This document shows positions 6,752 through 48,168 of a stretch of DNA of 64,000 nucleotides, piece by piece. The DNA is taken from positions 124,001 to 188,000 of the IMG/VR virus record IMGVR_UViG_3300035698_013060. One strand, written 5' to 3'. The notes beneath the pieces are model-generated. The model was not told the origin of the DNA, did no database searches, and saw only the letters and a program-made list of their open reading frames with translations. Every line of letters begins with the position of its first letter. Position 1 is the first letter of the stretch. The position numbers and the translations under genes were made by a program.

Positions 6752-6763
6752 CAATGTCATGTT
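6752..6763 (-). promoter_or_regulatory. late/middle promoter AACA-TGACAT-TG
   Basis: AACA-N6-TG in the 25-nt gap directly before the primase SD. Confidence 0.7.
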
Positions 6764-6766
6764 CGC

Positions 6767-21961: not shown

Positions 21962-22008
21962 GATTTAATCTCTCCGATGTTTATATCCCAAGTATAGAGT
22001 TCTCATTG

Positions 22009-22020
22009 CAATAAGATGTT
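22009..22020 (-). promoter_or_regulatory. late promoter AACA-TCTTAT-TG
   Basis: strict match. Confidence 0.7.
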
Positions 22021-22035
22021 CTACCAGTTCGGAAG

Positions 22036-22081
22036 AAAAAAGAGGACTGATGGGGGAGGAGTGACCCTCCCCCACCGTCCT
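22036..22081 (-). terminator. terminator
   Basis: ggggagg..cctcccc stem followed by a U tract on the minus strand. Confidence 0.65.
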
Positions 22082-22230
22082 AGAATTCCTTGTCCCTAGC
22101 CCCCATTGGAACTGCGGCAGTTGATTGTATATCGGGCTCGGTCATAGACTGGCCCTTTGGGATGTTGTCTACCTCTCCTTCAGGGGGATTCGGGTCTTCC
22201 GGGATTTCGGCTCCCGTTGCCACGAACGAG

Positions 22231-22439
22231 TTACATTCTTCGACTGGATGCGAATCCCTCCTCTGATACTTCCCTGAAAGCAAATTTCAGGTGATCCGAT
22301 AGTGAGGGGCGCTTTTTCTCAATCCGAGAATGAAACTTGCGGTCGATCTCTTCTAATCTTTTTCCTTGCCTGAAGACGTTGAACATCTTCCTGGTGGCAG
22401 GGTCAGAATCGAAGTCGATTACCGCCTCCTTTCAGACAT
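22231..22439 (-). pseudogene. small early gene with a one-base frameshift near codon 3
   Basis: AAGGAGG SD plus ATG TCT GAA stops after 6 codons; the -1 frame reads KEAVIDFDSDPATRKMF...RRM. Confidence 0.45.
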
Positions 22440-22508
22440 GATCAGGGCCCTCCTTTGTTAGATCTTTTTGAACTGTCTAGGTAAGACTTAAACCCGTAAG
22501 CTATGACC

Positions 22509-22520
22509 TAATATATGTCT
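22509..22520 (-). promoter_or_regulatory. early promoter AGACATATATTA
   Basis: 12/12 identical to 14601-14612. Confidence 0.7.
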
Positions 22521-22550
22521 CTGTCACTTTTTGTCGTAGATCCATTCCGA

Positions 22551-22562
22551 AACAATCAATAG
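22551..22562 (+). promoter_or_regulatory. late promoter variant AACA-ATCAAT-AG
   Basis: upstream of the baseplate operon. Confidence 0.55.
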
Positions 22563-22602
22563 ACGGAGCTATAAAGAATGAACCGAGACAGGAGACCCAC
22601 CG

Positions 22603-23793
22603 ATGGCTGACGCGAATATCCATACCGGAACGGGTACCGTCAGGGGCGGGATTCAGCAGGACTCCCCGATAAAAGATTCGATGGACCCATCCCGGGTGTT
22701 AGACCCATTCAATGTATACAACAGGACTAGGACCCGTGGGGCCTGGAGAGAACCTGCTACCGGTCCAGTATGGTACGTTTTCATGACAGCTCCTAGCTGT
22801 AACCTGGCCGGACAGAACTTGAAAAACTACCGATACTTCCAGAAACTCTGGGAGGAACACGTAGAAGGGACTGTTACGTCTAGAGGTCGGGCTATCATAG
22901 AGGCTCTCTCGTTCGGTATCGAGGGAAAAGGCGTGTCCAGCATGATCAAACTGCTGACTAACACTGCCATGGGTTTCACTCCTGTAGATACAACCTCAAA
23001 TCCTCACACAATCGCTGAGACTTGGAACAAGCTCAAACATCAATATGCTGGTAATGATAACGACAGTAGGAGTGGTGGGTCATTCAGCATCGAGTATGAA
23101 GAGCTTCAAGGACTTCCCGTTCTGAATCTACACAAGTGCTGGTATGAATACATTCAGAAGGTGAAGAGTGGTAAGGTTCTCCCAGCTGAGTTCTTCCGGA
23201 CCAACCGGATCATAGACTACCAAACGTCTCTTTACTATTTCTTGATAGGACCAGATGGTGAATCCATTGAATTTTGGTCTAAGTTCACTGGGGTCTTTCC
23301 AACGGCGATGCCGTATAGTGCTATGGCCACAGGAGATGGTTCTCCTATCAAAATTTCAATCCCGTATGCCTTTGTGTACAAGGAAGACCTTGAGCCTGAG
23401 ATTTTAACAGACTTCAATGATTCCATCAAAGCCCAATCGGACAGGAATACGGTCTACGATGCTATCGTCTGGCCTGGAGTGTCTGTAGGGAACTTTGTTA
23501 AGGGATCAGGAAAGCTGGCATCTCGAGCAAAGGGAGAGACTTGGGATTGGATAACTGGTCTATTTGGAGCTGGAACAGAGTCATTCACTGATGAAACTTG
23601 GATCAAGCTGAGAGGAATCCAGCATAACGAGTATTCAGGTAGTGGTGGAACTGCTAAAGTTAGAGATGATGTCTTCGGCGCGAGCGCGGTGAAGGTGATC
23701 ATGAAGTCAAGGAACGGAGGCCCGGAAAGGCCCTGTTTAGTCTTCGACAATGTTGGGGATCCGAGCGAGAGTTCTGTACCCGCAATCATATGA
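22603..23793 (+). CDS. tail tube-fold baseplate protein (gp54-like)
   Basis: YVFMTAP.CNL, FSIEY.E, HK.W.EYI, IDY..S.YYF, K.TGVFP. Confidence 0.65.
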   Translation: MADANIHTGTGTVRGGIQQDSPIKDSMDPSRVLDPFNVYNRTRTRGAWREPATGPVWYVFMTAPSCNLAGQNLKNYRYFQKLWEEHVEGTVTSRGRAIIEALSFGIEGKGVSSMIKLLTNTAMGFTPVDTTSNPHTIAETWNKLKHQYAGNDNDSRSGGSFSIEYEELQGLPVLNLHKCWYEYIQKVKSGKVLPAEFFRTNRIIDYQTSLYYFLIGPDGESIEFWSKFTGVFPTAMPYSAMATGDGSPIKISIPYAFVYKEDLEPEILTDFNDSIKAQSDRNTVYDAIVWPGVSVGNFVKGSGKLASRAKGETWDWITGLFGAGTESFTDETWIKLRGIQHNEYSGSGGTAKVRDDVFGASAVKVIMKSRNGGPERPCLVFDNVGDPSESSVPAII

Positions 23794-23805
23794 ACGAGGT
23801 GAGAG

Positions 23806-33538: not shown

Positions 33539-36500
33539 TCATCCTTTCGCGATTCTGAGTATGGTCCCAGGAACTGCGAGGGAAGCGTTAGCTGTTTTAT
33601 CCCGACCTTCAGCATCTGATTGGCCCGGACCTTGTCCTCCGACAAACATATTGGGTCCAGACGACATAGAGCTATCTGTACTTCTCTTTTCACTCCCAGC
33701 CTCTGAGCTAGTTACCTTCAGGTTAACCGGGATTCCACTCTCGATGTTATCTGCCGTCCTATTGGTGTTGCTGGCGATAGCTTCAAGGAGTGTCAGCATC
33801 TTACTCTGATCGCCAACTATTGAGCTAGCGAGCATCTTAGTCTTGATGTCTTCCTTACGACTGAACATTTCTCTCGGAGACATCTCTACCGTTGGCCTGT
33901 TTGCCGTCGTCGGCATTTTAACAACCGAGACAGGAGTGGCTGTCGGAGAACGCTTCGGGATAGGTCCACCAGATGTACTAAGCTTCGATGACCCTAACAA
34001 CATATCCGGTTTTATCATACCCGGAGTCTTGTCCATGACAGGCTCGATCTCAGAGGCCTCTTCAGGACTCTCTGGCATACCCATCTTCCCAAAACCAGAC
34101 TGCATCTTGTTCCACTTAGCGTCCTTTTCAGCCTTGTGTTTCCTAAAGGTCTCTTCATCGACTGAAACGCCGTTGATTATGAAGGTTTTGCTGACCCTGC
34201 GCTTAACTCCATTTTCTGAAAGACCTCTGGTCTCAGGTTTAGCAACTGACTCAGAAGCACCTGTCGCCTGTTCATCGCTCTTCGGACCTGATCCCTTGAG
34301 CCTAGCAACGGACTCATTGAAGGCGGCAGTATCTTCTTCTCCGCCCTCTTCTTTACCAAACAGCTTGTTCCAGATGCCCTTGATAGCATTCTTAATTGCA
34401 TCCTTCAACATGCCGGGGATTTTAATGAAGAAGTCTTTGATCTTGCCCATGAACCCAAAGAACTTCTCCTTGATGTTAGCAACGAAGTCCTTGCCCATAT
34501 TCCAGATAGCTTTACCCCAGTCCTTGAATGCCCCGAGAATCTCTCCAGGAGCCTTGGCTATATTGCTGACCAGATTTTTTCCTGAGTCGAGTAGACCCTT
34601 TCCAAAACCTTTGATGAAAGCCCCAGCTGCAGCAGACTTCTGTTTGGTCATGTCCCAGGCTTTGCCGACAGCTTCCTTAGACTTGGTAAGTGCGGCCGAA
34701 GCCTTGTCCTTGATCTTATCGATCCCAGTCTTGTCATCTTCACGCTCTTCCTTATCGATCGTCTTACCAGCAGCCTTGGCTATGAGGTCGATCCTTCTCT
34801 TAGAGTAACTACTGATCTTCGAAGACTGTTGCAAGAGCCTGAGCTTATCCGGAGGAAGCTTACCGATGGCATCCCAATCCAAGACTTTCCACTTGCCCCA
34901 CCCGAAGGTATTCTTGAGTACTCCGACTTTCTCCAGTCCAACAGCAAGAGCATCACCCTCTTCTTCACTCTTAGAACCAGTAAGCCAACCATAAAGTTCA
35001 GAAATACCGTAAGTTGGTATTGCAGCACTACCAACGATACGAATAGCTTTGAAATCATCGGACTCTTTATCCTTGGCATCTTTATCGGCCTTTATAGCCT
35101 CTTTGGACTTGTCTTCTTCTTCCTTCTCTACGGTGCCCTTGGATTTGGCGATAGCTGCCATTTTCTCTTTGGTGGCCTTACCAAACTTACTCGACTTCGA
35201 GAGGAGATCTAGTTTATCTCCAGGTAGATTGCCGATAGCGTCCCAATCAGTGACTTTCCACTTTCCCCACCCAAGCGGATCTTTAACGACCCCTTCAGTA
35301 GTCAGAGCCTTAGCTAGTGCATCAGCTTCCCTGGTTTCCTTACCTCTGAAAAGCCACTTACCTATACTCGGAACTATCGACATAATGGATTTCCCAGCCA
35401 TCCATGCCAGCTTGAGACCAGCAATCGGGCTAAAGACTGCCTTGGCGAGCTTTTTACCGATACTTTCCTCTTCATCGAGGATAGCTTGTTCTCTCTCTTC
35501 TTCTTTGACAAATTCCCCAAACCCACGCTTCTTAGCGATATCTTTGAACTTATCTTTAGTCCTACCACTGAATAGGTTCGACCTAGTAAGCTCCATCAGA
35601 TTCGCTGGAGGCATCATCGCTACTGAATCCCAGTCCATGACCTTGTATTTGCCTGGGCCGAACGGATCTCTAACGACACCGCGTTCTTTCAGAGCTAGTA
35701 CAAGTGTATTGGCCTTGATCACTGATTCATCTGGAGCCATCACGAGTTTCCGAGCCTGCATTATCCCGCCGATTCCAGCGCCGACAGCAGCTCCTGCGGC
35801 AGTACCGGCTCCAGGGATGATCGATCCCAAAGTAGCACCGATCATAGCTCCTCGACCAGTAGATCCGACCATTCCAGCAGCCGCTTCACCAACCCCACCC
35901 TCTTTAGTACGAAAAACCTTTGCCAGAGTGCCTCTCTTCTTAGCACTCCCAGTCAACATTCCAGATATCATCCCCTCAACTTCACCAACTCCAGCTTCTT
36001 CAGAACCCCTGTGTCCTGTGAATCCACCTCTGGCGAGTTCTACACCAGCAAGAATCGCAGACAGAGCAGCTCCACCGCCAACCTTAGTGAGACCCTTACC
36101 CATGGTCTTAATGCCACCCTTACCAAACATCTTAAGTAGAGCACGCTCACCAGCCCGTTTGGCTCCATACTTCATTATACTTCGGCCTGCTCGCCAAACA
36201 GCTTTCCCCTTCCGACCAATGTTCCTGATTCTTCCACCTTTCCTCTGAGCTGGAACGCCAACGGTATCTAATACATCATCGTCAGCATCATCGTCAGCGG
36301 CAGTCATTCCCCCTATAGCTGCAGTGTCAGCTAAGTCTCCACTATCAGTAACATCTCTCTCTTCCTTGACCTTATCACGACGTTTAGCAACTCTAGCTGC
36401 CCTTGCAGCTTTTCTGTCCTTGAGCTTGGCGTCCATCCTAGTACTATCACGATCTCTGTCAGCCTCTTCAGCAATAGCCTTTCTCTCACTAGACTCTGCC

Positions 36501-39500
36501 TTTTGGTCCATAGTCTCGTCTTTTTCGTCAGCTGCTCGCTCTGTATCAGCCGTCCTGGTAACTAACGTTACTGATCTGACGATCTCAACCTGTTGGACTG
36601 AAGTAGCTTCTGCTTTTGTCGGGGTAGAAGTCTCTCTTGGAGAAGGATTGGTCATAGACGCAGAACCGCCAAACACGGCGCTAGCTCCTTCAGAGATCGC
36701 AGATGCAGTTCCTCTGACAGCCCTTCCTATGAAACCTCCGATTCTTCCCAAGACCCCCGGACCACTAGAACCAGCTGAGACTTCATCTTCACTCAAATCT
36801 CCCAAGCCAGGTCCTTCAACTCCGTACATCGGAATGGCTACTGAACCTATAATCTTAACCAGCTGGACTTTACCCCCGCTAGCAAGACCGCTTACAGCAT
36901 CAGCTCCTATTCCAAAGATACTACCAATACCTCGACCGAGGGCTTTGACACCATCCCAGAGTCCGTTAACGACCTTAGTCACACCGCTCCATAGGGCTGG
37001 AATGACATCATCCTTCAAAGCACCCCATAGACCTGTAGTAACAGCCTTTACACCATTCCAGAGTTCCGGAACTATAGCTTGGGCTGCACTCCACATCGTC
37101 TTAGTAACAGACACACCAGCATCCCAGAGACCCTTAGCGGCTATTTCAGCACCCTTCCAAAGAGTCTTCGTTATGGCAGTGACACCTTTCCATAGCTCAG
37201 GTACTACAGTTTGGACAGCCTTCCAAGCTTCTCCCGTCACCGTCTTGGTGACGTCCCATACTTCTGTCGCGATGGCCTTGACCCCTTCCCAAATATCCTG
37301 AGCTCTGTCCTTGATCCATGAGAATGAATCAGTAACGATGTCTTTAATCTTGTTCATCAGACGCTTCGGAGCATCCAGGACAGCCTGAATTCCATCCTTG
37401 AGCTTTCGTCCAATATCCTTGAACGGAGAAGTCAGCTTATCGAACATTCGACCGAAGAAGCCCCGATGCTTCCCAAGGGCACTCTCATCGACTTCATCCT
37501 TGTCAATGCCAAGCTTCTTAACGAGCCTAGCGAGATTCTTTCCAGTACCTGACAAGTGATCCTTCATGAAGTTGAGCATATCTTTGGTGTGACGCTCAGT
37601 CTCCACCATAGAACCAAAACCTTGAGCAGGACTTGCAGTTGTTCCGGATGCAGAAGCTGAAGTAGCACTTGCAAGAGCCGGAGCTTGAGCAGCAGGAGAA
37701 GCTTTAAGAGATGCTTCCTTTCTAGCTTGTCTAGCATCAGCTTTTTCTTTGAGTTTGATATCCAAATCTGCATCTCTAGTGGCTCTCGATGTCCTACGCC
37801 TCTCATCTCTATCCACTCTAGAAGTGCGACGATCTCTAGCAGCAGCATCTCTTTCAGTTATCCTAGCAGCAGCTATCGAAGCTCGCTCCTTAGACTGGGA
37901 ATCAATACCCGTCTTTTCTACAGTGGAAGTAGTGCTAGTATCTTGTTTTTCTGTCGGGATGGGTGGAGGCTTGGCGGATTCAGTAGCAGTAACTTCAGCA
38001 GTAGGTTCGTTTACTGTTCCATCCTTAGAAGTGACTTTTCCAGCCAACTTATCAGGAACACCCATACGCTTCTGCCATTCAGATTGAGCTTCTTCCGTTC
38101 TAGTTTCCGTCAGCTTAGGAGCAGCCTTCTCAGTTGAGGTACCACCGACTCCCATATGCTTCTGCCATGCTGTCTGAGTTTCCGTCCCTTCAGGTTTAAG
38201 AGACGTAGCAGCTCTAGCAGCAGCACCCTTTCTAGCGGCCTGTTTCTCTCTAAGGGCTGCAGCCTTCTCTTGTAAGAAGGAAACCCCCCTCTTCATTATT
38301 CCTCCAAGCCCTTTACCAAGCCAGTCCCGGAAGCTTTTTATATGGGCCCCGAAAGGCTCTAGGAAGTTCTCTTTGATCATCTCTCCGAACGGCTTACCGA
38401 AACTAGTTTCGAACATGGTACCCATGAACTCACTAACGGCACTCATCCCTTCCTTGATACCGTTTTTCACGATATCTGTCAGAGAGTTGAATCCTGCCTT
38501 CATCTCCTCCATGAATGGGTCAAAGACCCCCTTCATCGGATCAATGACGTTCTTACGAGTCCAGTCGGCGGTAGCTGTCCATGTCTCTGTAAAGAAAGTC
38601 CTGGCGGGATCTATGATATTCTCACCTACCCAGACGTTCAGAGCATCGAATTTTCCACCCTCACCGAATAGACCACCATCACCAGTCTTTTCGTTACCGA
38701 AGAGGTAATCAGTGGCCTTGGTGTAAATGGCTGTGATCTTTCCTTCTTCACCAAAGAGGTAATCTTGGACCTTCTGACTTCCAAGAGCATAACCGGCCCC
38801 GGCTCCAATGATCATGCCGACCGGACCAAATCCAGCCAGACTTGCACCGATACCGCCCAGGCCTGCGCCCCACAATTCTCCCTCATGATCCTTCATCCAG
38901 ATCTTAGCTTTACCAATAACTCCAGGATCACCTTCTTCGTCTGGATTACCGAAGAGCCAATTCTGGACTTTGTCAGTCTGTAAGGCATAGCCCGCACCAG
39001 CCCCGACAATCATACCAACAGGACCACCGAACATATACCCGGCAGTACCGCCGCCAAGCATTTTAGCGTTACCTTGAACCCAGTCTCCAGCCTTCTTGAT
39101 AATCCCTGGATCTCCATCATCACCCTCTTTACCGAACAGCCAGTTCTTAACCTTGTCAGTAGTCAAGGCATAGCCCGCACCAGCTCCAACGATCATGCCA
39201 ATGGGACCTCCGATGATACCAAGAGAAGCACCTCCACCAAAGGTAGCAGCTACTTTACCCATGTGCGGTTGGGCTTTCTTCCAAAACTTGTTAAGAGCCC
39301 CTTCCTTCCCAAAGAGAGACTCTCTAACGTTAGTCAGAGCTGTACCAGTTTGTTTCAAAGCTCTTGAGGCGAAGTTACTAACTGGATCTAGGACTTTGTC
39401 CTTCATCCAAGCTTTAATACCCCCACCTTCTTTGTCACCAGACCACAGTTCACTGAGTCCTTTACTAACGCCTTCGAAACTTCTTTGTGCGAAACCCTTG

Positions 39501-42208
39501 ATTGGATCCCATACTTGGGTCTGAAGAGAGTCTTTGAGACCACCTTTCTTAGACCAGAAGTCAGTGATAGGTTTGAAAGCCCCAATCACTGCATCAGCAC
39601 CACCACCGTCCTGAGACCACCAACTCTTGATCCCATCGACCATACCAGTCCACTTATTCTTAATCCAATCAAAAGCAATCCGGACAGGTTTAGTCATCCT
39701 ATCCATCAAGGAACCACCCTCTGGAGCATCAGGTTTGCCGAAGAACCATCTACCAACTTGATCTCCAACTCTATCAGTCATGTCAGCAATGGCTTGAATT
39801 GGATGCAAGAGCATCTCTTTGATGGACATCCTGTCGGCTTCTCGACGATCTTCTTGTTCCGTGTACTCTTCGTTAGGACCGATGGCTTCAGCAGCCTTAT
39901 TAACAGACGTTACTCTATCTAGTACTTCTTGTGCGTCTTTACCGTCCTTGAAACGCTTGTCGATCTCTCCAGACTTAGTCTTACGGATCTCACCGGTTTC
40001 AAGCTTGGCTTGGATTTCTTTCGCCTTCTCCATATCAGCCTTCTGATCTTGGAAGAAGGAGAGTAATGGATCTGGAGGAGGCTCTGGAAGAGCAGCGATA
40101 GAGGCTTCAGAGGCCCTATTGATCCTACCCTCTCTAGCAGCAGCTGAGACATCAATCCTCATCGCTCGACCATTTTTATCTCTGATCGTCGGCTCACCGC
40201 CATTTGCGCGGACAATATCCCTGAGAAGTCCGGGGATAGTATGGATGATAGCGCTTCTAACGTCGGCATCAAACGGAACTGGCTTGACTCTCCCGACGGC
40301 TTGCGCTGAAGAGACACTTCCCCCGACTTCGTAGGCCTGGATGTCACGGGAAGACCTGATGCTAGATATTTCTTGCTCCAGATCCCTGGACTCTCGGACA
40401 ATCTTTTTCTCGTCTTTGTCAAGCCCACCCTTAGCTTGTCTCTTCCTAAATTTGTCTTCCCCAGTCTGCCTTCTGATATCGTCCAATCGTCTCTGGGCTT
40501 CGATCTCCCTGGAAGAGACCATACTGGAGTCAGACATTACTTGTCTGAAAGCAGAGCCCTTGATATCACTTCCAACCTTATCACCGAATTCTGCACCGCT
40601 AGCCCTGAAGGCAAGTTTCTCTTTTTGTAACTGTGTCAGTCCGGAGACCCCAAGGCCCTTAACAGACTTGTTCCAAGCATCTACGAGCTCGACATTCAAG
40701 CCCGGAGCTGAAAGATCCCCGACAGACTTACCACTAGCAGCCATCTCAGCGCTACGAATCTTTTCCAGTTCTTTTTCAGCTACTTTTCTCTGTTCTGGAT
40801 TGAATTTGAAGGAATCCAGGACATTCCTACTCATATCTGTAGTAAAGCCTACACCACGTGTGGCGGCACTTCTCTCAACATTTAGTTGATCGACGACCTC
40901 TGTTCGAGTCCTCATCTTCCCGGTACCGTAGTCGAAGATCTGTTCATCTCCCTCAGTACCACCATTAATGGCATTGAGAATAAGGGAGAGGTACTTCGGG
41001 ATCACCTCAGTGATCGCCTTTTTGGTATGGGCATCGAACGGAACAGCTTTATCCAGAGTCCCCAATCTAGCGTCTACCCTGGTGTCGTCTCTGTCCATCC
41101 CGAGAAACCTACCAGCACCCCTCTTCAGAGTGTTGAGTACGCCATCATCAGTGATATTAGCCCACTCTTCAAGCTGAAGCATAAGTGTGGCCGGGAGTCC
41201 ACCGATGATGTTATCCATCCTCTGGAATGACTTCTGTAGACTTTCCGGGAAGAATTTCTCAGCGAGGGAGTCCATTGCCAACTCGAGAGGATTCGTGAGC
41301 ATGTCCTTGAACATGTTCATATCTTCGAGTGTAGTCTTGATCCTATCACTGACAGTCCTGACATAGTTTTCCGGACTGAAACCACCGTACTCAGTAAAGA
41401 TCTTATCATACTTGGTTTCAATACCATCACTAGCTCTGCCATCAACAGTCAAGCCAAGTGCCCCTAGATGGGCCTGAGATGCCCTATTGATCTCCTGAAG
41501 CTGGACTGCCATCTCGGAGATACCCGTCATAAGGGAACTCCGGTGCGAATCCAAACCAGTCTGATGGTTGTAGCCCGCTATTACTGCATGTTTCTGTTCT
41601 TGAATCAGACTCCGGATATTGTCCAAGATCGTATTGGTTGCAGTGATTCCTCTACCAAGAGCTCTACTGCTACCAATGACGGCGGAGGCTTGTACTGTAC
41701 CAGCAGCACCGATAGCCGTACCGACCTTACTTCCAAGTGAGGAAGCTTCCGATGAGATGGAAAACTTGTTGGAGACGTTAGTCACTCTGTTATCAGAGAC
41801 TTGAACTGGAGTAGAAGAATCTCCTCCGAAGTCTCCCATATCAATGTCGCTGTCACCCCCGTCGTCGCCTCTACCTACCATATCAGAAGTATCAAAATCT
41901 GACATCATATCGTCGTCGAAACCGAGAGCGGAAGCCATAGCGGCTCCCTTTTCCTCTTCCGACCTATAGAACTTCCCAGTACGAACGGCCTCCGTGGTGT
42001 TCTTCACCATGGCAGCCCCTACGTCCTTGACGACGTTCTCTTTGATCAGGCTTGTGACTTCGGATGCGACCTCTTTGACACTATCGCCCGAGGAGAAGAC
42101 CTCCTCGATCAGCTCGGCTGTTTGACCGAACATTTGAGTCTTGATCGCCCCGGCGGCCGCAAAGCCCAAACTTTTAGCAGCGTTCTTTGTAAAGCTGAAC
42201 GCACCCAT
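33539..42208 (-). CDS. tape measure protein (2889 aa)
   Basis: very long, Ala/Gly-rich; FD..T...I...IP..L motif twice, Gly-zipper repeats, 11-residue Trp repeats. Confidence 0.85.
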   Translation of the reverse strand: MGAFSFTKNAAKSLGFAAAGAIKTQMFGQTAELIEEVFSSGDSVKEVASEVTSLIKENVVKDVGAAMVKNTTEAVRTGKFYRSEEEKGAAMASALGFDDDMMSDFDTSDMVGRGDDGGDSDIDMGDFGGDSSTPVQVSDNRVTNVSNKFSISSEASSLGSKVGTAIGAAGTVQASAVIGSSRALGRGITATNTILDNIRSLIQEQKHAVIAGYNHQTGLDSHRSSLMTGISEMAVQLQEINRASQAHLGALGLTVDGRASDGIETKYDKIFTEYGGFSPENYVRTVSDRIKTTLEDMNMFKDMLTNPLELAMDSLAEKFFPESLQKSFQRMDNIIGGLPATLMLQLEEWANITDDGVLNTLKRGAGRFLGMDRDDTRVDARLGTLDKAVPFDAHTKKAITEVIPKYLSLILNAINGGTEGDEQIFDYGTGKMRTRTEVVDQLNVERSAATRGVGFTTDMSRNVLDSFKFNPEQRKVAEKELEKIRSAEMAASGKSVGDLSAPGLNVELVDAWNKSVKGLGVSGLTQLQKEKLAFRASGAEFGDKVGSDIKGSAFRQVMSDSSMVSSREIEAQRRLDDIRRQTGEDKFRKRQAKGGLDKDEKKIVRESRDLEQEISSIRSSRDIQAYEVGGSVSSAQAVGRVKPVPFDADVRSAIIHTIPGLLRDIVRANGGEPTIRDKNGRAMRIDVSAAAREGRINRASEASIAALPEPPPDPLLSFFQDQKADMEKAKEIQAKLETGEIRKTKSGEIDKRFKDGKDAQEVLDRVTSVNKAAEAIGPNEEYTEQEDRREADRMSIKEMLLHPIQAIADMTDRVGDQVGRWFFGKPDAPEGGSLMDRMTKPVRIAFDWIKNKWTGMVDGIKSWWSQDGGGADAVIGAFKPITDFWSKKGGLKDSLQTQVWDPIKGFAQRSFEGVSKGLSELWSGDKEGGGIKAWMKDKVLDPVSNFASRALKQTGTALTNVRESLFGKEGALNKFWKKAQPHMGKVAATFGGGASLGIIGGPIGMIVGAGAGYALTTDKVKNWLFGKEGDDGDPGIIKKAGDWVQGNAKMLGGGTAGYMFGGPVGMIVGAGAGYALQTDKVQNWLFGNPDEEGDPGVIGKAKIWMKDHEGELWGAGLGGIGASLAGFGPVGMIIGAGAGYALGSQKVQDYLFGEEGKITAIYTKATDYLFGNEKTGDGGLFGEGGKFDALNVWVGENIIDPARTFFTETWTATADWTRKNVIDPMKGVFDPFMEEMKAGFNSLTDIVKNGIKEGMSAVSEFMGTMFETSFGKPFGEMIKENFLEPFGAHIKSFRDWLGKGLGGIMKRGVSFLQEKAAALREKQAARKGAAARAATSLKPEGTETQTAWQKHMGVGGTSTEKAAPKLTETRTEEAQSEWQKRMGVPDKLAGKVTSKDGTVNEPTAEVTATESAKPPPIPTEKQDTSTTSTVEKTGIDSQSKERASIAAARITERDAAARDRRTSRVDRDERRRTSRATRDADLDIKLKEKADARQARKEASLKASPAAQAPALASATSASASGTTASPAQGFGSMVETERHTKDMLNFMKDHLSGTGKNLARLVKKLGIDKDEVDESALGKHRGFFGRMFDKLTSPFKDIGRKLKDGIQAVLDAPKRLMNKIKDIVTDSFSWIKDRAQDIWEGVKAIATEVWDVTKTVTGEAWKAVQTVVPELWKGVTAITKTLWKGAEIAAKGLWDAGVSVTKTMWSAAQAIVPELWNGVKAVTTGLWGALKDDVIPALWSGVTKVVNGLWDGVKALGRGIGSIFGIGADAVSGLASGGKVQLVKIIGSVAIPMYGVEGPGLGDLSEDEVSAGSSGPGVLGRIGGFIGRAVRGTASAISEGASAVFGGSASMTNPSPRETSTPTKAEATSVQQVEIVRSVTLVTRTADTERAADEKDETMDQKAESSERKAIAEEADRDRDSTRMDAKLKDRKAARAARVAKRRDKVKEERDVTDSGDLADTAAIGGMTAADDDADDDVLDTVGVPAQRKGGRIRNIGRKGKAVWRAGRSIMKYGAKRAGERALLKMFGKGGIKTMGKGLTKVGGGAALSAILAGVELARGGFTGHRGSEEAGVGEVEGMISGMLTGSAKKRGTLAKVFRTKEGGVGEAAAGMVGSTGRGAMIGATLGSIIPGAGTAAGAAVGAGIGGIMQARKLVMAPDESVIKANTLVLALKERGVVRDPFGPGKYKVMDWDSVAMMPPANLMELTRSNLFSGRTKDKFKDIAKKRGFGEFVKEEEREQAILDEEESIGKKLAKAVFSPIAGLKLAWMAGKSIMSIVPSIGKWLFRGKETREADALAKALTTEGVVKDPLGWGKWKVTDWDAIGNLPGDKLDLLSKSSKFGKATKEKMAAIAKSKGTVEKEEEDKSKEAIKADKDAKDKESDDFKAIRIVGSAAIPTYGISELYGWLTGSKSEEEGDALAVGLEKVGVLKNTFGWGKWKVLDWDAIGKLPPDKLRLLQQSSKISSYSKRRIDLIAKAAGKTIDKEEREDDKTGIDKIKDKASAALTKSKEAVGKAWDMTKQKSAAAGAFIKGFGKGLLDSGKNLVSNIAKAPGEILGAFKDWGKAIWNMGKDFVANIKEKFFGFMGKIKDFFIKIPGMLKDAIKNAIKGIWNKLFGKEEGGEEDTAAFNESVARLKGSGPKSDEQATGASESVAKPETRGLSENGVKRRVSKTFIINGVSVDEETFRKHKAEKDAKWNKMQSGFGKMGMPESPEEASEIEPVMDKTPGMIKPDMLLGSSKLSTSGGPIPKRSPTATPVSVVKMPTTANRPTVEMSPREMFSRKEDIKTKMLASSIVGDQSKMLTLLEAIASNTNRTADNIESGIPVNLKVTSSEAGSEKRSTDSSMSSGPNMFVGGQGPGQSDAEGRDKTANASLAVPGTILRIAKG

Positions 42209-42319: not shown

Positions 42320-43072
42320 ATGGCTTACCTACCAGAACAGGACATACTGACCAAAGTTCTCCATAAGGCCCAAGAAATCGCGGGCGCACGTGAGGACAGG
42401 ACCGGCGACATTATCAATGTAGCAACCTCCCAGATTTCGGAGGTAGTTCCTGATATCGCAGGTTCGCTGATAGATTGCGGATTCTTAGATCTTAGCAAGA
42501 TAGGCGAGATCTGCGATCTCTTGGCTGAGATCTCCACAGTCTCGTTTGCATTAAAGGATGGAGTTCTTTTTCATGTGGACCAAAGTGAGGATCTGTTGGG
42601 AGGAACTGAACTAGAATTGGACGGCGGAGCTGACATAGACGTAGATTTCCTTTCCGGAATGGCTGAGAAACTTACGGGAGCTTCCAAGAGCTTAGCCTAC
42701 ATTCCTAATCTATTTGAAGATTGCATGAACATCCCGACTTTCGATCCCATATCAGGGATACTAGGAGACCTTACTGGACTACTCTCAGATATCATCGGTC
42801 TGAAAAGTCTAGGTGACATCGGATTATCTGGAAAGGAAGACTCCATCAGGTCCATGCTCTTAAGTCGGGTTCAATCTATCCTAAGTTCTTGCAATCTGAT
42901 TCATGGTTCCATCAACTCAGAGATAGCTAATGGTCTACGGGCTCTTGCTATGGTTGGAGATCTATGCTCCGGTTCTCTGGTCAATCCAGAAGTAGATGGG
43001 AGTCCAATACAGGTAGAGGGTATCCCAGACATAGACTACGACATCCTCGATCGAGTAAGTAGGACGGTGTGA
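42320..43072 (+). CDS. acidic late hypothetical protein
   Basis: ORF under a late promoter. Confidence 0.7.
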   Translation: MAYLPEQDILTKVLHKAQEIAGAREDRTGDIINVATSQISEVVPDIAGSLIDCGFLDLSKIGEICDLLAEISTVSFALKDGVLFHVDQSEDLLGGTELELDGGADIDVDFLSGMAEKLTGASKSLAYIPNLFEDCMNIPTFDPISGILGDLTGLLSDIIGLKSLGDIGLSGKEDSIRSMLLSRVQSILSSCNLIHGSINSEIANGLRALAMVGDLCSGSLVNPEVDGSPIQVEGIPDIDYDILDRVSRTV

Positions 43073-43073
43073 T

Positions 43074-43907
43074 ATGAAGACCATCAGAGAGTATGACGAG
43101 TGGAGCACCGAGGTAGACTCTCTCATGCTCCTTAGAGAAGAAGATAAGGAGGCCTACTTTAGGTCAGTCCTGTCTAATGACTTCAAGCTCTCGTGTGAGA
43201 TCCTAGGAAGAACATTCTTCTCCGGGATTTACTCACTGAGCATTCTATATGAAAAGTCAAGAGAAATTCTGGATATGTCTAGGAGGTTGGCTGTATCCCC
43301 GGCTACCCTTCCCAGTCTACCCATAGAATCGTACGTGACTTCTAGTGAGACGAGAGCCATTGGCGGAAGATGTGAAATCGCCAGGTTCTTTGATGGGATG
43401 GACTCAGAGATAGTCTTCCCAGGAATGTCAGCATCAGTCGCCATACTAGAGACTAGCGAATTCTTCGAGAGAACATCAGTGTTATTCTTGGAGTGGTTTT
43501 TACCTCTTGGAAGGAGAAAAAAGATTACAGTTATCAGAGATGCTGTAGCTTTTGTATCTAAATCCAAGAAGGATATGAATATTCCAGCTCATGCTGTTAC
43601 TATCAGATTATCATCCACTGGAGTATTCGCTATACTCAAGGGGATTAGAGATGGTGTCGTGACTGAAGCTCCTGGGGGATGGTACGAAGAAGTTGTTGGT
43701 TCTATAGAATACGTTCTAGAGCGCGAGTCTCTAGTCGACGCTGGTCTTACAGTTGTCTCTGATACATGGAATGCGCTGTTTAGAGACGAAGCTTATCCAA
43801 CTTTGTCTATTCTAAAAGGAGGTGGAAACGAAGAGTTCACTACCTTCATAAACTCTTTGATACCCCATTTTGGAACGGGGGTCGCCAACGCACTAGCGTT
43901 AGCGTAA
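43074..43907 (+). CDS. late hypothetical protein
   Basis: 1-nt gap after the previous gene. Confidence 0.7.
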   Translation: MKTIREYDEWSTEVDSLMLLREEDKEAYFRSVLSNDFKLSCEILGRTFFSGIYSLSILYEKSREILDMSRRLAVSPATLPSLPIESYVTSSETRAIGGRCEIARFFDGMDSEIVFPGMSASVAILETSEFFERTSVLFLEWFLPLGRRKKITVIRDAVAFVSKSKKDMNIPAHAVTIRLSSTGVFAILKGIRDGVVTEAPGGWYEEVVGSIEYVLERESLVDAGLTVVSDTWNALFRDEAYPTLSILKGGGNEEFTTFINSLIPHFGTGVANALALA

Positions 43908-43928: not shown

Positions 43929-43962
43929 AGACGGGAACTTGGCCGAAGCCAGGTTCCCGTCT
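43929..43962. terminator. terminator between convergent genes
   Basis: agacgggaacttggc-cgaa-gccaggttcccgtct with flanking A tract. Confidence 0.8.
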
Positions 43963-43996: not shown

Positions 43997-44851
43997 CTAG
44001 TCTTCGGGAACGAAATCCCCGTCTTCATCTATCTCACCGCGAACAGACTCCACGCCTTCGATGTTCCGGTCGTACTTGGAACGACAATGAGCGGGCATCA
44101 GGCTGCTGGATGCGCCATCGATGATACTGCCGAAGAAACGCTCTTGGATGAATACCCGACGGAACATGGCGTCCATGAACTTGAGCGAGTAGTCGCCGGT
44201 CACGGCGATCAGAGTGTCTTCGATCAGAGTCACGAGGTCAGCTGTGATCTTCTTGGACTCAGGAGCGCCGAGGTCGGAAGTCTCGAGGTATTCGTGCACG
44301 ATGCTCATCAACGTGTCACGCGGAATCCGGCTTCCCTCTTCGGGGAGCTCACCGGGGACCGTCAACTCGATGTCATTGACAGTGAACTTAAAAGACTTCT
44401 TGCCAGCCGAACGGCCGCCCAGAACAATACCACGGCGTTTCCCGGCCGTCTTCTTGGCAGCGGGCTTTGCAGTAGTCTTCTTCGTGGCAGGCTTGCCCTT
44501 CTTGGTCGGAGGAGCCTTCTTGACAGGCTTCTTCTTCCCAACGACCTTCTTGATCACGAGCTTCTTCTCGATGACCTTCTTCTTCTTCTTCGGGGGAGGA
44601 GCTTCCTCGACCTCTTCCTCGACTTCCTCGACCTCTTCCTCGACTTCTTCGACCTCTTCCTCGACCTCTTCGGTCTCTTCCTCGACTTCTTCGACCTCTT
44701 CCTCGACCTCTTCGGTCTCTTCCTCGACTTCTTCGACCTCTTCGACTTCCTCAGGCGGAGCCGCAGCGACCTTCTTGCGAGGAACGATTTTCTTCTTCGG
44801 AGCGGAACCGGATTTCGTTCCGACTACTTTTTTCTTGGGACGGATGGCCAT
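43997..44851 (-). CDS. histone-like protein: Lys-rich / poly-Glu / Lys-rich / HU-like domain
   Basis: KKK-rich arms, (EEV/T)n tract, C-terminal RDTLMSIVHE...SKKITADLV..IEDTL.......LKF....F resembling HU/IHF; AAGGA SD at ATG 44851. Confidence 0.65.
   Translation of the reverse strand: MAIRPKKKVVGTKSGSAPKKKIVPRKKVAAAPPEEVEEVEEVEEETEEVEEEVEEVEEETEEVEEEVEEVEEEVEEVEEEVEEAPPPKKKKKVIEKKLVIKKVVGKKKPVKKAPPTKKGKPATKKTTAKPAAKKTAGKRRGIVLGGRSAGKKSFKFTVNDIELTVPGELPEEGSRIPRDTLMSIVHEYLETSDLGAPESKKITADLVTLIEDTLIAVTGDYSLKFMDAMFRRVFIQERFFGSIIDGASSSLMPAHCRSKYDRNIEGVESVRGEIDEDGDFVPED
44601..44752. repeat. imperfect tandem coding repeat (9/12-nt units, EEV/EEEV/EEET)
   Basis: cttcctcgac/ctcttcctcgac units in tandem. 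Confidence 0.9.
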
Positions 44852-45050
44852 GTGATGCATTCCTTGTTTTTCTGATAGGTCATGGCATTTAGATCGAAAG
44901 GGTGCCACCCTCTCTCTTCGTAAGGACTGTCATACAAACTTGGCTTAGTTTGCAAAAAGCTGCCTCTTCTCTCAGATTCTCCTTTCATTTCATAGATCAT
45001 TATTTGGCCGGGTTGGAAATTAACGGGTAAGCCTACAACCGTGCAATCCC

Positions 45051-45063
45051 ATTATATATGTCT
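45051..45063 (-). promoter_or_regulatory. early promoter AGACATATATAAT
   Basis: shares AGACATATAT with the 14601 and 22509 sites. Confidence 0.65.
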
Positions 45064-45254: not shown

Positions 45255-45293
45255 AAAAAGAAAAGAGACGATACGGCGGTATGCCGTATCGTC
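45255..45293 (-). terminator. intrinsic terminator of the fibre operon
   Basis: gacgatacggc..gccgtatcgtc plus U tract. Confidence 0.85.
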
Positions 45294-45322
45294 CCTAAAA
45301 CTCAAGATTTCTGTGTTCCTGA

Positions 45323-46503: not shown

Positions 46504-48168
46504 TTAGATTACTTCTTCGAGCTCGGCCTGCATCGTCCCTGCCGTGTTAGACACGGCATTAGGAAGATCACAGTTGTACCATACGGTTCCCTGAGGATCG
46601 ACCGATCCACCAAGGCCATCCAAGATGGTGTACTCATCCAGAGTATCATCCTGATCAGCCCTGTGATCGAAGTTGAGAGAACCAGAAGGACTCTTCGAGA
46701 GGTTCGTACATTCCAACTTCATTACATCCAAGACGGAGGTCTCTATGGCAACCTCTCTGTTAGGCCATGCTGAGATGGTGAGCGTCCTAAGGACGAATCC
46801 TCCGATGATGTAGTTCACACCATTGGTAGGAACGTTGATGACCTTTCCAGCCAGGTTGACGGCATCGAAGCTCCCCCACGCGTGGGATCCCTTCACGTCG
46901 TCATCATGGACCTGAAGATCTCTTGTCCAGACCATCGGTCCCCCTGCGAAAGCTGCTCCTTGGAACGTCCCAGACGGAGCGACCATTGTGGGAGGCTGGA
47001 GGAATTCCTGATTTCCAGTGACGGTGATGATATGATCTTGTGCGACAGTACCAGCATTACCACCACTTCTGAGTCTGGCAGCCGGAACGGCGATATCTAC
47101 CGTCATGTCAACATGTGCAATCTGGATGATGACATTTTCCACGGTGGATGCATCGTTAGCTGTTCTTGTCGCAGTGGCTCTGAGATTGTCAACGGAAACA
47201 TTGTAGTTTCCGGAGATTCTCTCAACTGTCTTGCTCGCTTCCACGACTGAAGGATTGGTAATGAGTAGCTCTGCACTGGGCGAGTCGAATAGTACAACAT
47301 CCAGATCTGAGGTGGTGATTACCACTGAAGCCGTCTCAGAGTCCTTGAGGGCTTCCTGTGCTCCGGGGTATGTGGTAATCCCGAATGAGACCGTTGGATG
47401 CAGATTGTTGAGCGGAAGGGTGTTCCCTGTTTCAAAGGCTGCCCCAAGGCTTCCACTGGCGTCTACGGCTTGAATCCGTGCAGTGAGGTTTTGTAGCGTC
47501 GTCCCTCTGTTGGCGATCGTAACCTGAATAGTCGTGTTCGTCGTTGATGCAAAGCTGTGTGAGGATGCTTGGCATGCACCAAAGCCTTCGACCTCGATCC
47601 CTATCATGGGCTCAACAGAATCGATGACGAGGTTGACTACGTCTCCTTCCTTGAGTTCTGTCTGAGTTCCAGGAAGTGCTCCAAACAGAGCTCCTGATAC
47701 TTCAGGTCCAACTTGGATGGTAACGTCACACGCGTTGATCGGACCATCAGAATGGATGGCTGTTACATCTCCGGAAGCTCCAAGAGTGATGTCCACTGTA
47801 CCAGCCCACATCGGTTGATCCGGGAGCTGAGTAAGTGTCACTGAGATACCGTTGACCGTGACTGAAGGTAACAGAGTTGTTCCTCCACTGATAGCCATGA
47901 CGCTAACGGCAATTTCACCGTCGTCAGAGGTACAAGAGATAAGCTCCAATCCGTCTGATCTGGTGACCTTTGAGCCAACATTTCCACCTGCTGCAGGAGC
48001 GATGTCTGTGATGAATATCCCACCAGAGATTCCACCAGCCGTCAGTCCTGCCATGATGGCGTCAATGGACCTAACGGCGTTGTTGAGAATCTGTCCCCAG
48101 TTGTCACTGTCGCCACCAATGTCTGGGAGCTCGATATCGTAATTCGGCGTGTGTTCGTTCTGTGCCAT
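46504..48168 (-). CDS. tail fibre / Ig-like beta-rich structural protein
   Basis: TPNY.I.LP.....W...LN anchor; YPG.Q.ALK..E; T/V/S-rich. Confidence 0.7.
   Translation of the reverse strand: MAQNEHTPNYDIELPDIGGDSDNWGQILNNAVRSIDAIMAGLTAGGISGGIFITDIAPAAGGNVGSKVTRSDGLELISCTSDDGEIAVSVMAISGGTTLLPSVTVNGISVTLTQLPDQPMWAGTVDITLGASGDVTAIHSDGPINACDVTIQVGPEVSGALFGALPGTQTELKEGDVVNLVIDSVEPMIGIEVEGFGACQASSHSFASTTNTTIQVTIANRGTTLQNLTARIQAVDASGSLGAAFETGNTLPLNNLHPTVSFGITTYPGAQEALKDSETASVVITTSDLDVVLFDSPSAELLITNPSVVEASKTVERISGNYNVSVDNLRATATRTANDASTVENVIIQIAHVDMTVDIAVPAARLRSGGNAGTVAQDHIITVTGNQEFLQPPTMVAPSGTFQGAAFAGGPMVWTRDLQVHDDDVKGSHAWGSFDAVNLAGKVINVPTNGVNYIIGGFVLRTLTISAWPNREVAIETSVLDVMKLECTNLSKSPSGSLNFDHRADQDDTLDEYTILDGLGGSVDPQGTVWYNCDLPNAVSNTAGTMQAELEEVI

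What the first reader, a model, noticed from the sequence alone, without database searches (positions are those of the whole stretch)
43997..44851. Histone H1-like / poly-glutamate / HU-like fusion under its own early promoter
Seen: a basic arm (KKKVVG..KKKIVPRKK), about 50 residues of (EEV/T)n, a second long PAKK-type basic arm, then a roughly 110-aa globular domain with HU/IHF-like helix-helix-beta spacing. Codons end strongly in C/G, and the leader after AGACATATATAAT is about 190 nt. Inference: an abundant phage nucleoid or chromatin protein with a built-in acidic DNA-mimic (autoinhibitory or chaperone) block. Such charge-block polyampholytes tend to phase-separate, so it could organise or shield replicating phage DNA.
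Basis: partly seen in the sequence, partly recalled or inferred. Interest (0 to 1): 0.65.

Follow-up and report, generated by a model that had tools for sequence, protein, structure and literature searches.

The report
Jumbo-phage HU-fold protein with charge-block tail
This gene of a salt-lake jumbo phage encodes a very divergent HU/IHF-type (bacterial "histone-like") dimer domain behind a long tail of alternating lysine-rich and glutamate-rich blocks; its relatives in two studied phages are among their most strongly transcribed genes, yet nobody has described what the family does.

Summary
Window 43997-44851 (minus strand) encodes a 284-aa protein with four parts: a basic arm, a 51-residue EEV/EET tract, a second Lys/Pro/Ala arm and a globular C-terminal domain. 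The gene lies between two terminator hairpins. Its GC3 is the third highest of 168 long ORFs, next to the capsid protein.

The C-terminal domain has an HU/IHF (DNABII) fold. An AF2 model (pLDDT 90) finds only HU, IHF, Hbb and ASFV pA104R at the top of two independent PDB searches. The family profile hits a bona fide phage HU (E 5e-5). A homodimer prediction passes its controls. Pfam's HU model does not reach this protein.

The phage belongs to the AR9/PBS1/phiR1-37 clade, whose studied members have uracil DNA and two multisubunit RNA polymerases; no chimallin was found here. Family members include AR9 g200 and phiR1-37 g101, both unannotated.
- AR9 g200 has a mapped early promoter and a mapped late promoter. 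It ranks about 10th to 17th of about 292 genes at all times.
- phiR1-37 g101 is a late, very highly expressed gene and was found in virions.

Best reading: an abundant phage nucleoid-type protein. DNA binding, DNA mimicry by the acidic tract and phase separation are untested. It is a new variant of a known kind.

The parts
43997..44851 (-). CDS of the 284-aa protein (P0001), stop codon included
   Evidence: the start is supported by the N-terminal motif shared with relatives; AAGGA ribosome-binding site at 44861-44865, 9 nt before the ATG
44759..44851 (-). Basic arm 1 (aa 1-31), with the family-conserved N-terminal M-A-I-K/R-P-K-K motif
44603..44755 (-). Acidic tract (aa 33-83), (EEV/EET)n, encoded by a 21-nt tandem repeat; copy number uncertain
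   Evidence: contigs break here in all runs; a 270-aa variant exists
44396..44599 (-). Basic arm 2 (aa 85-152), Lys/Pro/Ala/Thr-rich; ends in a G-K/R-hydrophobic-G-G-K/R motif that recurs in relatives
44000..44395 (-). Globular C-terminal domain (aa 153-284): N-terminal beta-hairpin, two helices, beta-sheet with arm, two extra C-terminal strands
   Evidence: AF2 model with pLDDT 90.3 and pTM 0.70; conserved in 22 aligned relatives
44039..44335 (-). HU/IHF (DNABII)-like core within the domain (aa 173-271); the invariant Arg238 aligns with HU Arg58
   Evidence: Foldseek and VIA-align top hits are all HU/IHF/Hbb/pA104R; hhalign to phage HUs; dimer interface
45051..45063 (-). Promoter-like AT-rich motif AGACATATATAAT, a degenerate copy of the genome-wide motif (A/G)AC-N-CATATTAC
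   Evidence: the nearest orthologue's contig has a related ATATTAC-containing string upstream; AR9 g200 has a mapped early promoter with a similar ATATATATTAT core
44852..45050 (-). 5' leader of about 190-200 nt, without a recognisable RNA family or unusual folding
   Evidence: no Rfam hit; z = +0.86
45264..45296 (-). Intrinsic terminator of the upstream gene (14-bp stem and T run); it isolates the gene from the upstream operon
43930..43961 (.). GC-rich hairpin (14-nt arms, 4-nt loop) 36 nt after the stop codon, followed on the minus strand by a T-rich run; it also lies after the convergent plus-strand ORF ending at 43907, so it may act in both directions
   Evidence: read directly from the sequence; not listed by the consensus scan

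Best explanation
The gene encodes an abundant, phage-made nucleoid-associated ('chromatin-type') protein.

Proposed mechanism:
- Two copies pair through a very divergent HU/IHF (DNABII) domain.
- Each copy carries a long disordered tail in which lysine-rich arms are interrupted by a poly-glutamate block.
- The lysine arms, and possibly the beta-arms of the HU-like core, bind DNA.
- The acidic block tempers or competes with that binding and gives the protein a blocky polyampholyte character.

The gene is its own transcription unit. By analogy with AR9 g200, it is probably switched on early by the injected virion RNA polymerase and driven further late.

Its likely job is to coat, compact or organise the phage genome in a clade of jumbo phages that lack a detectable chimallin. 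Some of the protein may travel with the DNA into the virion, since the phiR1-37 orthologue is recorded as a virion protein.

Shown: architecture, fold, predicted dimer, family, synteny and the expression of the orthologues.
Inferred: DNA binding, the role of the acidic tract, and the target being phage rather than host DNA.
For: Fold:
- AF2 model on 22 relatives: pLDDT 90.3.
- Foldseek against the PDB: the top ~30 hits are all HU, IHF, Hbb or ASFV pA104R, prob ~1, target-normalised TM 0.55-0.68, but E only 0.03-0.5.
- VIA-align against 48,161 chains, independent of Foldseek: the top five are the same family, Z 5.1-6.6, 83-96 residues aligned of about 95.
- BFVD: four family members first, then about 40 phage HU/IHF proteins.

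Sequence link to HU:
- The family profile hits phiR1-37 g131, an annotated HU, at E 5.2e-5.
- 4 of 22 members hit Pfam PF00216, best E 5.7e-5; it is the only family hit by more than one member.
- hhalign against phage HUs: probability 67.6%, E 5e-5, 78 columns in the expected register.

Dimer:
- ipSAE 0.83 against a best control of 0.00.
- The mark was reached by 20 of 30 solved homodimers and 1 of 23 solved monomers.
- The runs agree in at least 97% of their contacts, and the partner's pLDDT is at least 86.
- HU dimers are solved, so this shows likeness rather than binding.

Abundance and timing:
- GC3 rank 3 of 168.
- AR9 g200 reaches 1250, 5708 and 8701 FPKM at 5, 20 and 40 min, against 3599 for the capsid gene at 40 min. 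It has a mapped early and a mapped late start site.
- phiR1-37 g101 is late, with counts of 2930, 21421 and 62946, and is a virion structural protein.

Family-wide build: every member has both K-rich and D/E-rich blocks, although their order varies.

Clade:
- The capsid protein is 40% identical to AR9/PBS1 and 29% to phiR1-37.
- No chimallin was found.
Against: - No experiment shows DNA binding for any member.
- Pfam's HU model does not reach this protein at E<=10. Structural scores are middling (Z<8, Foldseek E>0.01).
- The globular part (aa 165-284) is net -13 in this copy, and whole proteins of the family run from +1 to -36. That is odd for a DNA coat.
- The intercalating tip proline of HU is not kept here.
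- The phage already has a canonical HU, so the need for a second one is unexplained.
- AR9 g200 is not among the AR9 virion proteins, so packaging is not general.
- The conserved place next to the tape-measure gene could point to a tail or ejection role instead.
Confidence: 0.55

Rival explanations
1. It is a packaged virion protein: an internal head, DNA-end or ejection protein. It is loaded with or beside the genome and delivered into the next cell, where it protects or positions the incoming DNA. The charge blocks act as counter-ions or spacers.
For: - phiR1-37 g101 is recorded as a phage structural protein, as is that phage's canonical HU g131.
- The gene sits in the tail and virion module, always just upstream of the tape-measure cluster, in this phage, AR9, PALS_2 and a 62-kb metagenomic contig.
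- Its codon bias matches that of the major virion proteins.
- The N-terminal motif is conserved and could be a targeting signal.
Against: - AR9 g200 is transcribed strongly at 5 min from a mapped early promoter, whereas 41 of 43 AR9 virion protein genes are late.
- It is not annotated as a virion protein in AR9.
- An abundant DNA-binding protein can co-purify with virions without being a built-in part.
Confidence: 0.2
2. It is a host-takeover or anti-defence decoy. The poly-glutamate tract mimics DNA and soaks up host DNA-binding proteins such as nucleoid proteins, restriction enzymes or uracil-DNA repair enzymes. Alternatively, the HU-like domain pairs with host HU and poisons it.
For: - AR9 g200 is expressed early.
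- Whole proteins of the family are net neutral to strongly acidic, and the globular part is acidic in this copy.
- The HU tip proline is missing.
- Studied members of the clade have uracil DNA, which needs protection from host repair (PMC7598289).
- Acidic DNA mimics are an established phage strategy (own knowledge: Ocr, Ugi, SPO1 Gp46).
Against: - The lysine arms and the Arg that aligns with HU Arg58 are conserved.
- Expression keeps rising to the end of infection.
- The acidic tract varies freely in length, sequence and position, as a bulk-charge element does and a shaped mimic does not.
Confidence: 0.12
3. It is a chaperone or loading factor for the phage's canonical HU, in the manner of nucleoplasmin. 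The acidic blocks hold the very abundant basic HU, and the HU-like domain docks on it or forms mixed dimers.
For: - Each studied relative also encodes a canonical HU: this phage, phiR1-37 g131 and AR9 g103.
- AR9 g103 reaches 52,105 FPKM at 40 min.
- In phiR1-37 both proteins are recorded in virions.
- The two share a fold that dimerises.
Against: This is purely inferential. In AR9 the timing differs: g200 starts early, HU starts late.
Confidence: 0.08
4. It is not a functional gene: a low-complexity ORF created by a tandem repeat.
For: The middle of the ORF is a 21-nt tandem array. The opposite strand also has long open frames.
Against: - There are 23 relatives at E<=1e-3, with a conserved 120-aa domain that folds confidently.
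- Orthologues are transcribed and detected in AR9 and phiR1-37.
- Synteny is conserved.
Confidence: 0.01

Closest known systems
AR9 g200 (phrog_24291) and Yersinia phage phiR1-37 g101, uncharacterised proteins of uracil-DNA jumbo phages
   Same: - The C-terminal domain is homologous: profile E 8.5e-17 to AR9 g200, BLASTP 27% identity and E 5e-12 to g101.
- Both have K-rich and E/D-rich blocks.
- AR9 g200 shares the position upstream of the tape-measure gene.
- Both are their own transcription units with an AT-rich promoter.
   Different: - In this copy the acidic tract is one long, regular EEV repeat, and the domain is more acidic. The source is a salt lake.
- phiR1-37 g101 sits between RNA-polymerase genes rather than by the tape-measure gene.
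- None of the family has an assigned function.
Bacterial HU/IHF (DNABII, Pfam PF00216), including phage HUs such as SPO1 TF1
   Same: - Two helices followed by a beta-sheet with an arm, and a predicted intertwined dimer.
- The Arg that aligns with HU Arg58 is invariant.
- Own knowledge: TF1 is a phage HU that prefers the phage's own modified (hmU) DNA. That is a precedent for a base-specific phage HU.
   Different: - The Pfam model does not reach this protein.
- It has an extra N-terminal beta-hairpin and two extra C-terminal strands.
- There is no tip proline.
- The domain is acidic rather than basic.
- It carries a tail of about 150 residues.
Mycobacterial HupB/Hlp and Deinococcus HU (HU with Lys/Ala/Pro-rich 'H1-like' extensions); also phiR1-37 g131
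   Same: An HU-fold core is joined to PAKK-type basic repeats. phiR1-37 g131 shows the same on a canonical HU. The bacterial examples are from own knowledge.
   Different: Here the extension is N-terminal in most members and is interrupted by long acidic blocks. The bacterial proteins have no acidic tract.
HMGB1-type architecture (DNA-binding boxes, basic linkers, long acidic tail)
   Same: A DNA-binding fold is combined with basic segments and a long D/E tract. In HMGB1 that tract folds back and damps DNA binding (own knowledge). Several family members carry the acidic tract as a C-terminal tail (P0013-15, P0020-22).
   Different: The fold and origin are unrelated. Autoinhibition is not tested here.
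African swine fever virus pA104R
   Same: It is a virus-encoded HU-fold protein and appears among the structural matches. Own knowledge: it is late-expressed and packaged with the genome.
   Different: It is a eukaryotic virus protein of canonical length, without charge-block tails.

Membership tests
DNABII (HU/IHF), Pfam PF00216 | Fold: two-helix body followed by a three-stranded sheet with an extended beta-arm | tested here: met
   - AF2 model: pLDDT 90.3, helices at 39-52 and 61-81, then strands.
- The top PDB matches in Foldseek and in VIA-align are all HU/IHF/Hbb/pA104R and cover nearly the whole target chain.
- The same holds in BFVD.
- Scores are middling: Z 5.1-6.6, E 0.03-0.5.
DNABII (HU/IHF), Pfam PF00216 | Sequence reaches the curated Pfam profile threshold (22.4 bits) | tested here: not met
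   - No PF00216 hit for this protein at E<=10.
- The genome scan with PF00216 finds only the canonical HU.
- Remote signals exist: 4 of 22 relatives hit PF00216 (best E 5.7e-5), the family profile hits phiR1-37 HU g131 at 5.2e-5, and hhalign gives probability 67.6%.
DNABII (HU/IHF), Pfam PF00216 | Obligate intertwined dimer | tested here: met
   - Prediction only: ipSAE 0.83 against a best control of 0.00.
- The mark was reached by 20 of 30 solved homodimers and 1 of 23 solved monomers.
- Contacts agree in at least 97% of cases; pLDDT is at least 86.
- The interface runs through both helices and the last long strand.
- The result may reflect memory of solved HU dimers.
DNABII (HU/IHF), Pfam PF00216 | Conserved DNA-contacting arm residues (Arg55/58/61 and the intercalating tip Pro63) | tested here: inconclusive
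   - Arg238 (R99 of the domain piece) is invariant and aligns with HU Arg58.
- Other basic residues line the arm.
- The tip proline aligns with Ile in this protein. In relatives a proline lies 3-4 residues after the Arg, but not in a fixed place.
DNABII (HU/IHF), Pfam PF00216 | Binds and bends double-stranded DNA | not testable with these tools
   No experiment exists for any member. The globular part is net -13 here.
Linker histone H1/H5 | Winged-helix globular domain (Pfam Linker_histone) | tested here: not met
   No such Pfam hit. The structural matches are HU/IHF, not winged helix.
Linker histone H1/H5 | Lys/Ala/Pro-rich disordered tail | tested here: met
   aa 85-152 are K/P/A/T-rich. This is a likeness of composition only.
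AR9 g200 / phiR1-37 g101 family (phrog_24291) | Homologous C-terminal domain | tested here: met
   - tblastn to g101: E 5e-5; BLASTP: E 5e-12.
- The profile finds AR9 g200 at 8.5e-17, BpSp at 1.8e-9 and PALS2_175 at 1.4e-6.
- AR9 g200 is phrog_24291, which was the only weak PHROG hit of this domain.
AR9 g200 / phiR1-37 g101 family (phrog_24291) | Disordered part with both basic and acidic blocks | tested here: met
   All 20 full-length members examined have both kinds of block, and whole-protein net charge runs from +1 to -36.
AR9 g200 / phiR1-37 g101 family (phrog_24291) | Own transcription unit next to the tape-measure cluster in AR9-like jumbo phages | tested here: met
   - Terminators lie on both sides.
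- The tape-measure ORF is at 33539-42208.
- The same order is seen in AR9, PALS_2 and contig L035.
- It is not met in phiR1-37.
Packaged internal head or ejection proteins (T4 IPs, phiKZ inner body) | Present in purified virions in many copies | not testable with these tools
   The evidence from orthologues is mixed: phiR1-37 g101 is a virion protein, while AR9 g200 is not listed as one.

The most novel reading that the evidence does not exclude
This family is the main 'chromatin' of uracil-DNA jumbo phages that lack a chimallin nucleus. Dimers with blocky polyampholyte tails would condense the phage genome into a protein-DNA condensate. That condensate would serve as a membrane-less and shell-less replication compartment, keeping host nucleases and uracil repair away from the DNA. 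The protein might prefer uracil-containing DNA, as SPO1 TF1 prefers hmU DNA. It would then be a functional alternative to the phage nucleus.
Probability: 0.1. Interest if true: 0.85.

Novelty: new variant of a known kind. Interest (0 to 1): 0.58.

Why it matters
Jumbo phages of the phiKZ type protect their DNA inside a protein nucleus. The AR9/PBS1/phiR1-37 branch lacks a chimallin homologue, and in the papers searched here nothing describes how these phages organise or protect their DNA.

This family is conserved, among the most strongly transcribed genes in the two studied members, and unannotated: 'hypothetical protein' in AR9 and 'unknown function' in PHROGs. It can now be read as an HU-fold dimer with charge-block tails. 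That turns a 'hypothetical protein' into a direct, testable candidate for phage chromatin in two culturable systems, AR9 with Bacillus subtilis and phiR1-37 with Yersinia enterocolitica.

It also adds an unusual build to the DNABII family: a divergent HU-type core combined with an HMGB-like acidic tract and H1-like basic arms.

Tried and rejected
- Pfam, PHROGs and PDB sequence searches with the whole protein gave only low-complexity noise: coiled-coil families, and 'exonuclease' or 'minor head protein' matches confined to the E-rich tract. I rejected these as compositional.
- A PDB profile search with the family alignment gave only weak threonyl-tRNA-synthetase editing-domain hits (E 0.03). 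I rejected them because neither structure search supports them.
- The word-index protein search found only the near-identical 270-aa copy.
- Megablast of the region against phages gave no match.
- BLASTP of the two full-length proteins found nothing until the tails were cut off.
- A chimallin search with PhiPA3 gp53 found nothing.
- PhiPA3 and Listeria phage LPJP1 have no credible family member.
- The ESM Atlas search by features gave no usable hit, and its own whole-protein model is poor.
- The sigma-70 scan found no promoter for this gene.
- The leader has no Rfam match and no unusual folding.
- I looked for a motif shared by the upstream regions of the capsid, sheath and other virion genes, as a candidate late promoter, and saw none.
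- A paper search for the motif string was useless.
- Searches for AR9 gp200, and for HU-like or histone-like jumbo-phage proteins, found no description of this family.
[quoted passage not shown] I take it as a low-complexity artefact.
- No RNA runs hold this phage, so its own expression could not be checked.
Full report
**What is there.** The window is bases 124001-188000 of a complete 241,176-bp viral record with direct terminal repeats. On the minus strand, 44851 down to 43997 encodes a 284-aa protein. Its parts are:
- a basic arm, aa 1-31;
- a 51-residue tract made only of E, V and T, aa 33-83;
- a second Lys/Pro/Ala/Thr-rich arm, aa 85-152;
- a globular domain, aa 153-284.

The acidic tract is encoded by a 21-nt tandem array (6.8 copies, 89% matches). 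The gene is a unit of its own. A 14-bp terminator hairpin closes the upstream gene at 45296-45264. A GC-rich hairpin followed by a T-rich run on the minus strand lies 36 nt after the stop codon. GC3 is 0.688 against a genome mean of 0.539 (sd 0.07). That is third of 168 long ORFs, in the company of the major head protein (0.732), a virion protein next to the tail sheath (0.735) and another virion protein (0.711).

One caveat concerns the repeat. Contigs from four salt-lake metagenome runs all break inside the array, and a near-identical 270-aa version lacks 14 residues of it. The repeat number is therefore uncertain.

**Which phage.** The major head protein (G000 6048-7715) is 40% identical to that of Bacillus phages AR9 and PBS1, 33% to Staphylococcus phage PALS_2 and 29% to Yersinia phage phiR1-37. 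The genome carries a multisubunit RNA polymerase gene. PhiPA3 chimallin finds nothing in it. It has no ThyA or ThyX, but it has one dCMP-deaminase-family gene. The literature describes this branch as jumbo phages with two multisubunit RNA polymerases. AR9 and phiR1-37 are described as having uracil DNA (PMC7598289). PBS1, PALS_2 and phiR1-37 served as representatives that lack a chimallin homologue (PMC10299810). Uracil DNA in this particular phage is an inference from kinship and gene content, not a finding. The DNA occurs in salt-lake metagenomes from at least four studies.

**The family.** Standard libraries were blank or showed only compositional noise. tblastn of the C-terminal 145 residues against 50,697 phage records found only phiR1-37 g101 (27% identity, E 5e-5). 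That protein has the same alternation of K-rich and E/D-rich blocks before a related domain. HMMER against 1.84 billion representatives gave 23 hits at E<=1e-3. Nearly all are 250-380 aa with the same build, although in some the acidic tract is a C-terminal tail. A profile of 22 domains (A1) then found AR9 g200 (E 8.5e-17), a BpSp protein (1.8e-9) and PALS2_175 (1.4e-6). It found nothing credible in PhiPA3 or in Listeria phage LPJP1. AR9 g200 is 'hypothetical protein' and makes up phrog_24291, 'unknown function'. All 20 full-length members examined have both basic and acidic blocks, and whole-protein net charge runs from +1 to -36.

Gene order is conserved. The gene lies just upstream of the tape-measure cluster in this phage (the 2889-aa ORF at 33539-42208), in AR9, in PALS_2 and in a 62-kb metagenomic contig. 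That contig also keeps the two opposite-strand ORFs in between.

**The fold.** An AlphaFold2 model of aa 140-284 built on A1 has pLDDT 90.3 and pTM 0.70. It shows a beta-hairpin, two helices, a sheet with a long arm and two further strands.
- Foldseek against the PDB puts HU, IHF, Hbb and ASFV pA104R in about the first 30 places (prob ~1, target-normalised TM 0.55-0.68, rmsd 2.5-3 A for the best), though with E of only 0.03-0.5.
- VIA-align against 48,161 representative chains does not depend on Foldseek. Its first five places go to the same family (Z 5.1-6.6, 83-96 residues of about 95), and only helix-pair matches follow.
- In BFVD the four best matches are family members, followed by about 40 phage HU/IHF proteins.

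Sequence evidence agrees.
- The A1 profile hits phiR1-37 g131, an annotated 'histone family DNA-binding protein', at E 5.2e-5.
- 4 of 22 members hit Pfam PF00216 (best E 5.7e-5), the only family hit by more than one member.
- hhalign of A1 against two phage HUs gives probability 67.6% and E 5e-5 over 78 columns, in the register expected from the structures. The invariant Arg238 lies opposite HU Arg58.

A homodimer prediction scored ipSAE 0.83 against a best control of 0.00. The mark was reached by 20 of 30 proteins solved as homodimers and 1 of 23 solved as single chains. The runs agree in at least 97% of contacts and pLDDT is at least 86. The interface runs through both helices and the last long strand, as in HU. 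Because HU dimers are solved, this shows likeness rather than proof.

Against simple membership: Pfam's model does not reach this protein, the tip proline is not kept, and the globular part (aa 165-284) is net -13 in this copy. I therefore call it a very divergent HU/IHF-fold domain, not a canonical HU. The phage has a canonical HU elsewhere (G000 2614-2880).

**Expression.** This phage has no RNA data, so the evidence comes from orthologues.
- AR9 g200 has a mapped early start site (164233, 78-nt leader) behind the AR9 early consensus, and a mapped late start site (164186, 125-nt leader).
- Its FPKM values are 1250, 5708 and 8701 at 5, 20 and 40 min. By my count from the two parts of Table S4 that I read (g001-g289), that is about 17th, 10th and 13th of about 292 genes. 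The capsid gene reaches 3599 (PMC5312081).
- phiR1-37 g101 is classed as late, with counts of 2930, 21421 and 62946, and is listed as a virion structural protein (PMC4848604 Table S2).

In this genome one AT-rich motif recurs, (A/G)AC-N-CATATTAC. Thirteen of the 23 ATATTAC copies lie in the 11% of the genome that is intergenic, mostly 45-130 nt before an ORF. The contig of the closest orthologue has a related ATATTAC-containing string upstream of its gene. A review states that the only motif found bioinformatically in such phages is the early, virion-polymerase promoter, and that late promoters escape prediction (PMC7598289). So an early promoter is plausible. The orthologues suggest continuous expression that rises late, not early-only expression. 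The leader shows no Rfam match and no unusual folding.

**Interpretation.** The best-supported reading is an abundant phage nucleoid-type protein. It would be a dimeric HU-fold core with lysine arms that can hold DNA and an acidic block that tempers or competes with this. It would be made from the start of infection and in large amounts late. In phiR1-37 it may travel with the genome into the virion.
- Shown: architecture, fold, predicted dimer, family, synteny and expression of orthologues.
- Inferred: DNA binding, the role of the acidic tract, and the target.

The rivals are a packaged ejection protein, a decoy for host DNA-binding proteins, and a chaperone for the phage's own very abundant HU. 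They are listed with their tests. 'H1-like' holds for composition only. DNA mimicry and phase separation remain open.

**Novelty.** The held literature and the family libraries give this family no function and no fold. It is a new variant of a known kind: a DNABII fold with a blocky polyampholyte tail, found so far only in AR9/phiR1-37-like jumbo phages. Two culturable relatives make the question directly testable.

Noticed in passing
whole genome G000; in the window e.g. 4592 (-), 14607 (+), 17501 (+), 22514 (-), 51421 (+): A recurrent promoter-like motif, (A/G)AC-N-CATATTAC(G). Thirteen of 23 ATATTAC copies lie in the 11% of the genome that is intergenic, mostly 45-130 nt upstream of ORFs, including an RNA-polymerase beta-subunit gene. 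It resembles the AR9 early-promoter core, so it is probably the virion-RNAP early promoter of this phage.
   Followed up: partly
window 46504-48168 (-): PHROGs labels this ORF 'tail sheath'. It is in fact 44% identical to PhiPA3 gp165 and phiKZ gp145, and matches only Pseudomonas and Vibrio phiKZ-like phages, whereas the capsid is AR9-like. The genome's real sheath gene is at G000 21788-24694. This looks like a mosaic tail-fibre or baseplate module.
   Followed up: partly
window 33539-42208 (-): A 2889-aa tape-measure protein (several tape-measure PHROGs, best E 1.3e-27). The homologous position in a related 62-kb contig holds a protein of more than 2600 aa with a phage lysozyme domain.
   Followed up: partly
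window 42320-43072 (+) and 43074-43907 (+): Two ORFs of unknown function, convergent with the target gene, are conserved in the same place and orientation in contig L035 (27% identity with E 2e-22, and 26% with E 3e-6). They form a fixed block between the HU-like gene and the tape-measure gene.
   Followed up: partly
G000:C1:2614-2880 (-), outside the window (L003 1492-1773): The phage also encodes a canonical 93-aa HU (PF00216 at 93 bits, phrog_379). The relatives do too. phiR1-37 g131 has a PAKK-type C-terminal tail and is a virion protein. AR9 g103 is one of the most highly expressed late genes, at 52,105 FPKM at 40 min.
   Followed up: partly
whole genome G000: No thymidylate synthase (ThyA or ThyX) is found in a complete 241-kb jumbo phage, but there is a dCMP-deaminase-family gene at G000 33668-34015. 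PhiPA3 chimallin finds no match. This is consistent with, but does not prove, a uracil-DNA phage without a nucleus, like AR9 and phiR1-37.
   Followed up: partly
window 44633-44714: Short-read contigs from four salt-lake metagenome runs all end inside the acidic-tract repeat, and a 270-aa version of the protein exists on a 237.6-kb contig. The 42-nt difference may be real copy-number variation or an assembly artefact.
   Followed up: partly
N-termini of P0001, P0003-P0009, P0018-P0025, AR9 g200: Despite otherwise unalignable tails, most members start with a similar short motif, M-A-I-K/R-P-x-K-K or M-P-V-K-K. A second short motif, G-K/R-hydrophobic-x-hydrophobic-G-G-K/R, precedes the domain. 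Their roles are unknown; targeting or DNA contact are possibilities.
   Followed up: no
PMC4848604 Table S2, phiR1-37 g101: [quoted passage not shown] No search here supports that. It is probably a low-complexity artefact.
   Followed up: partly
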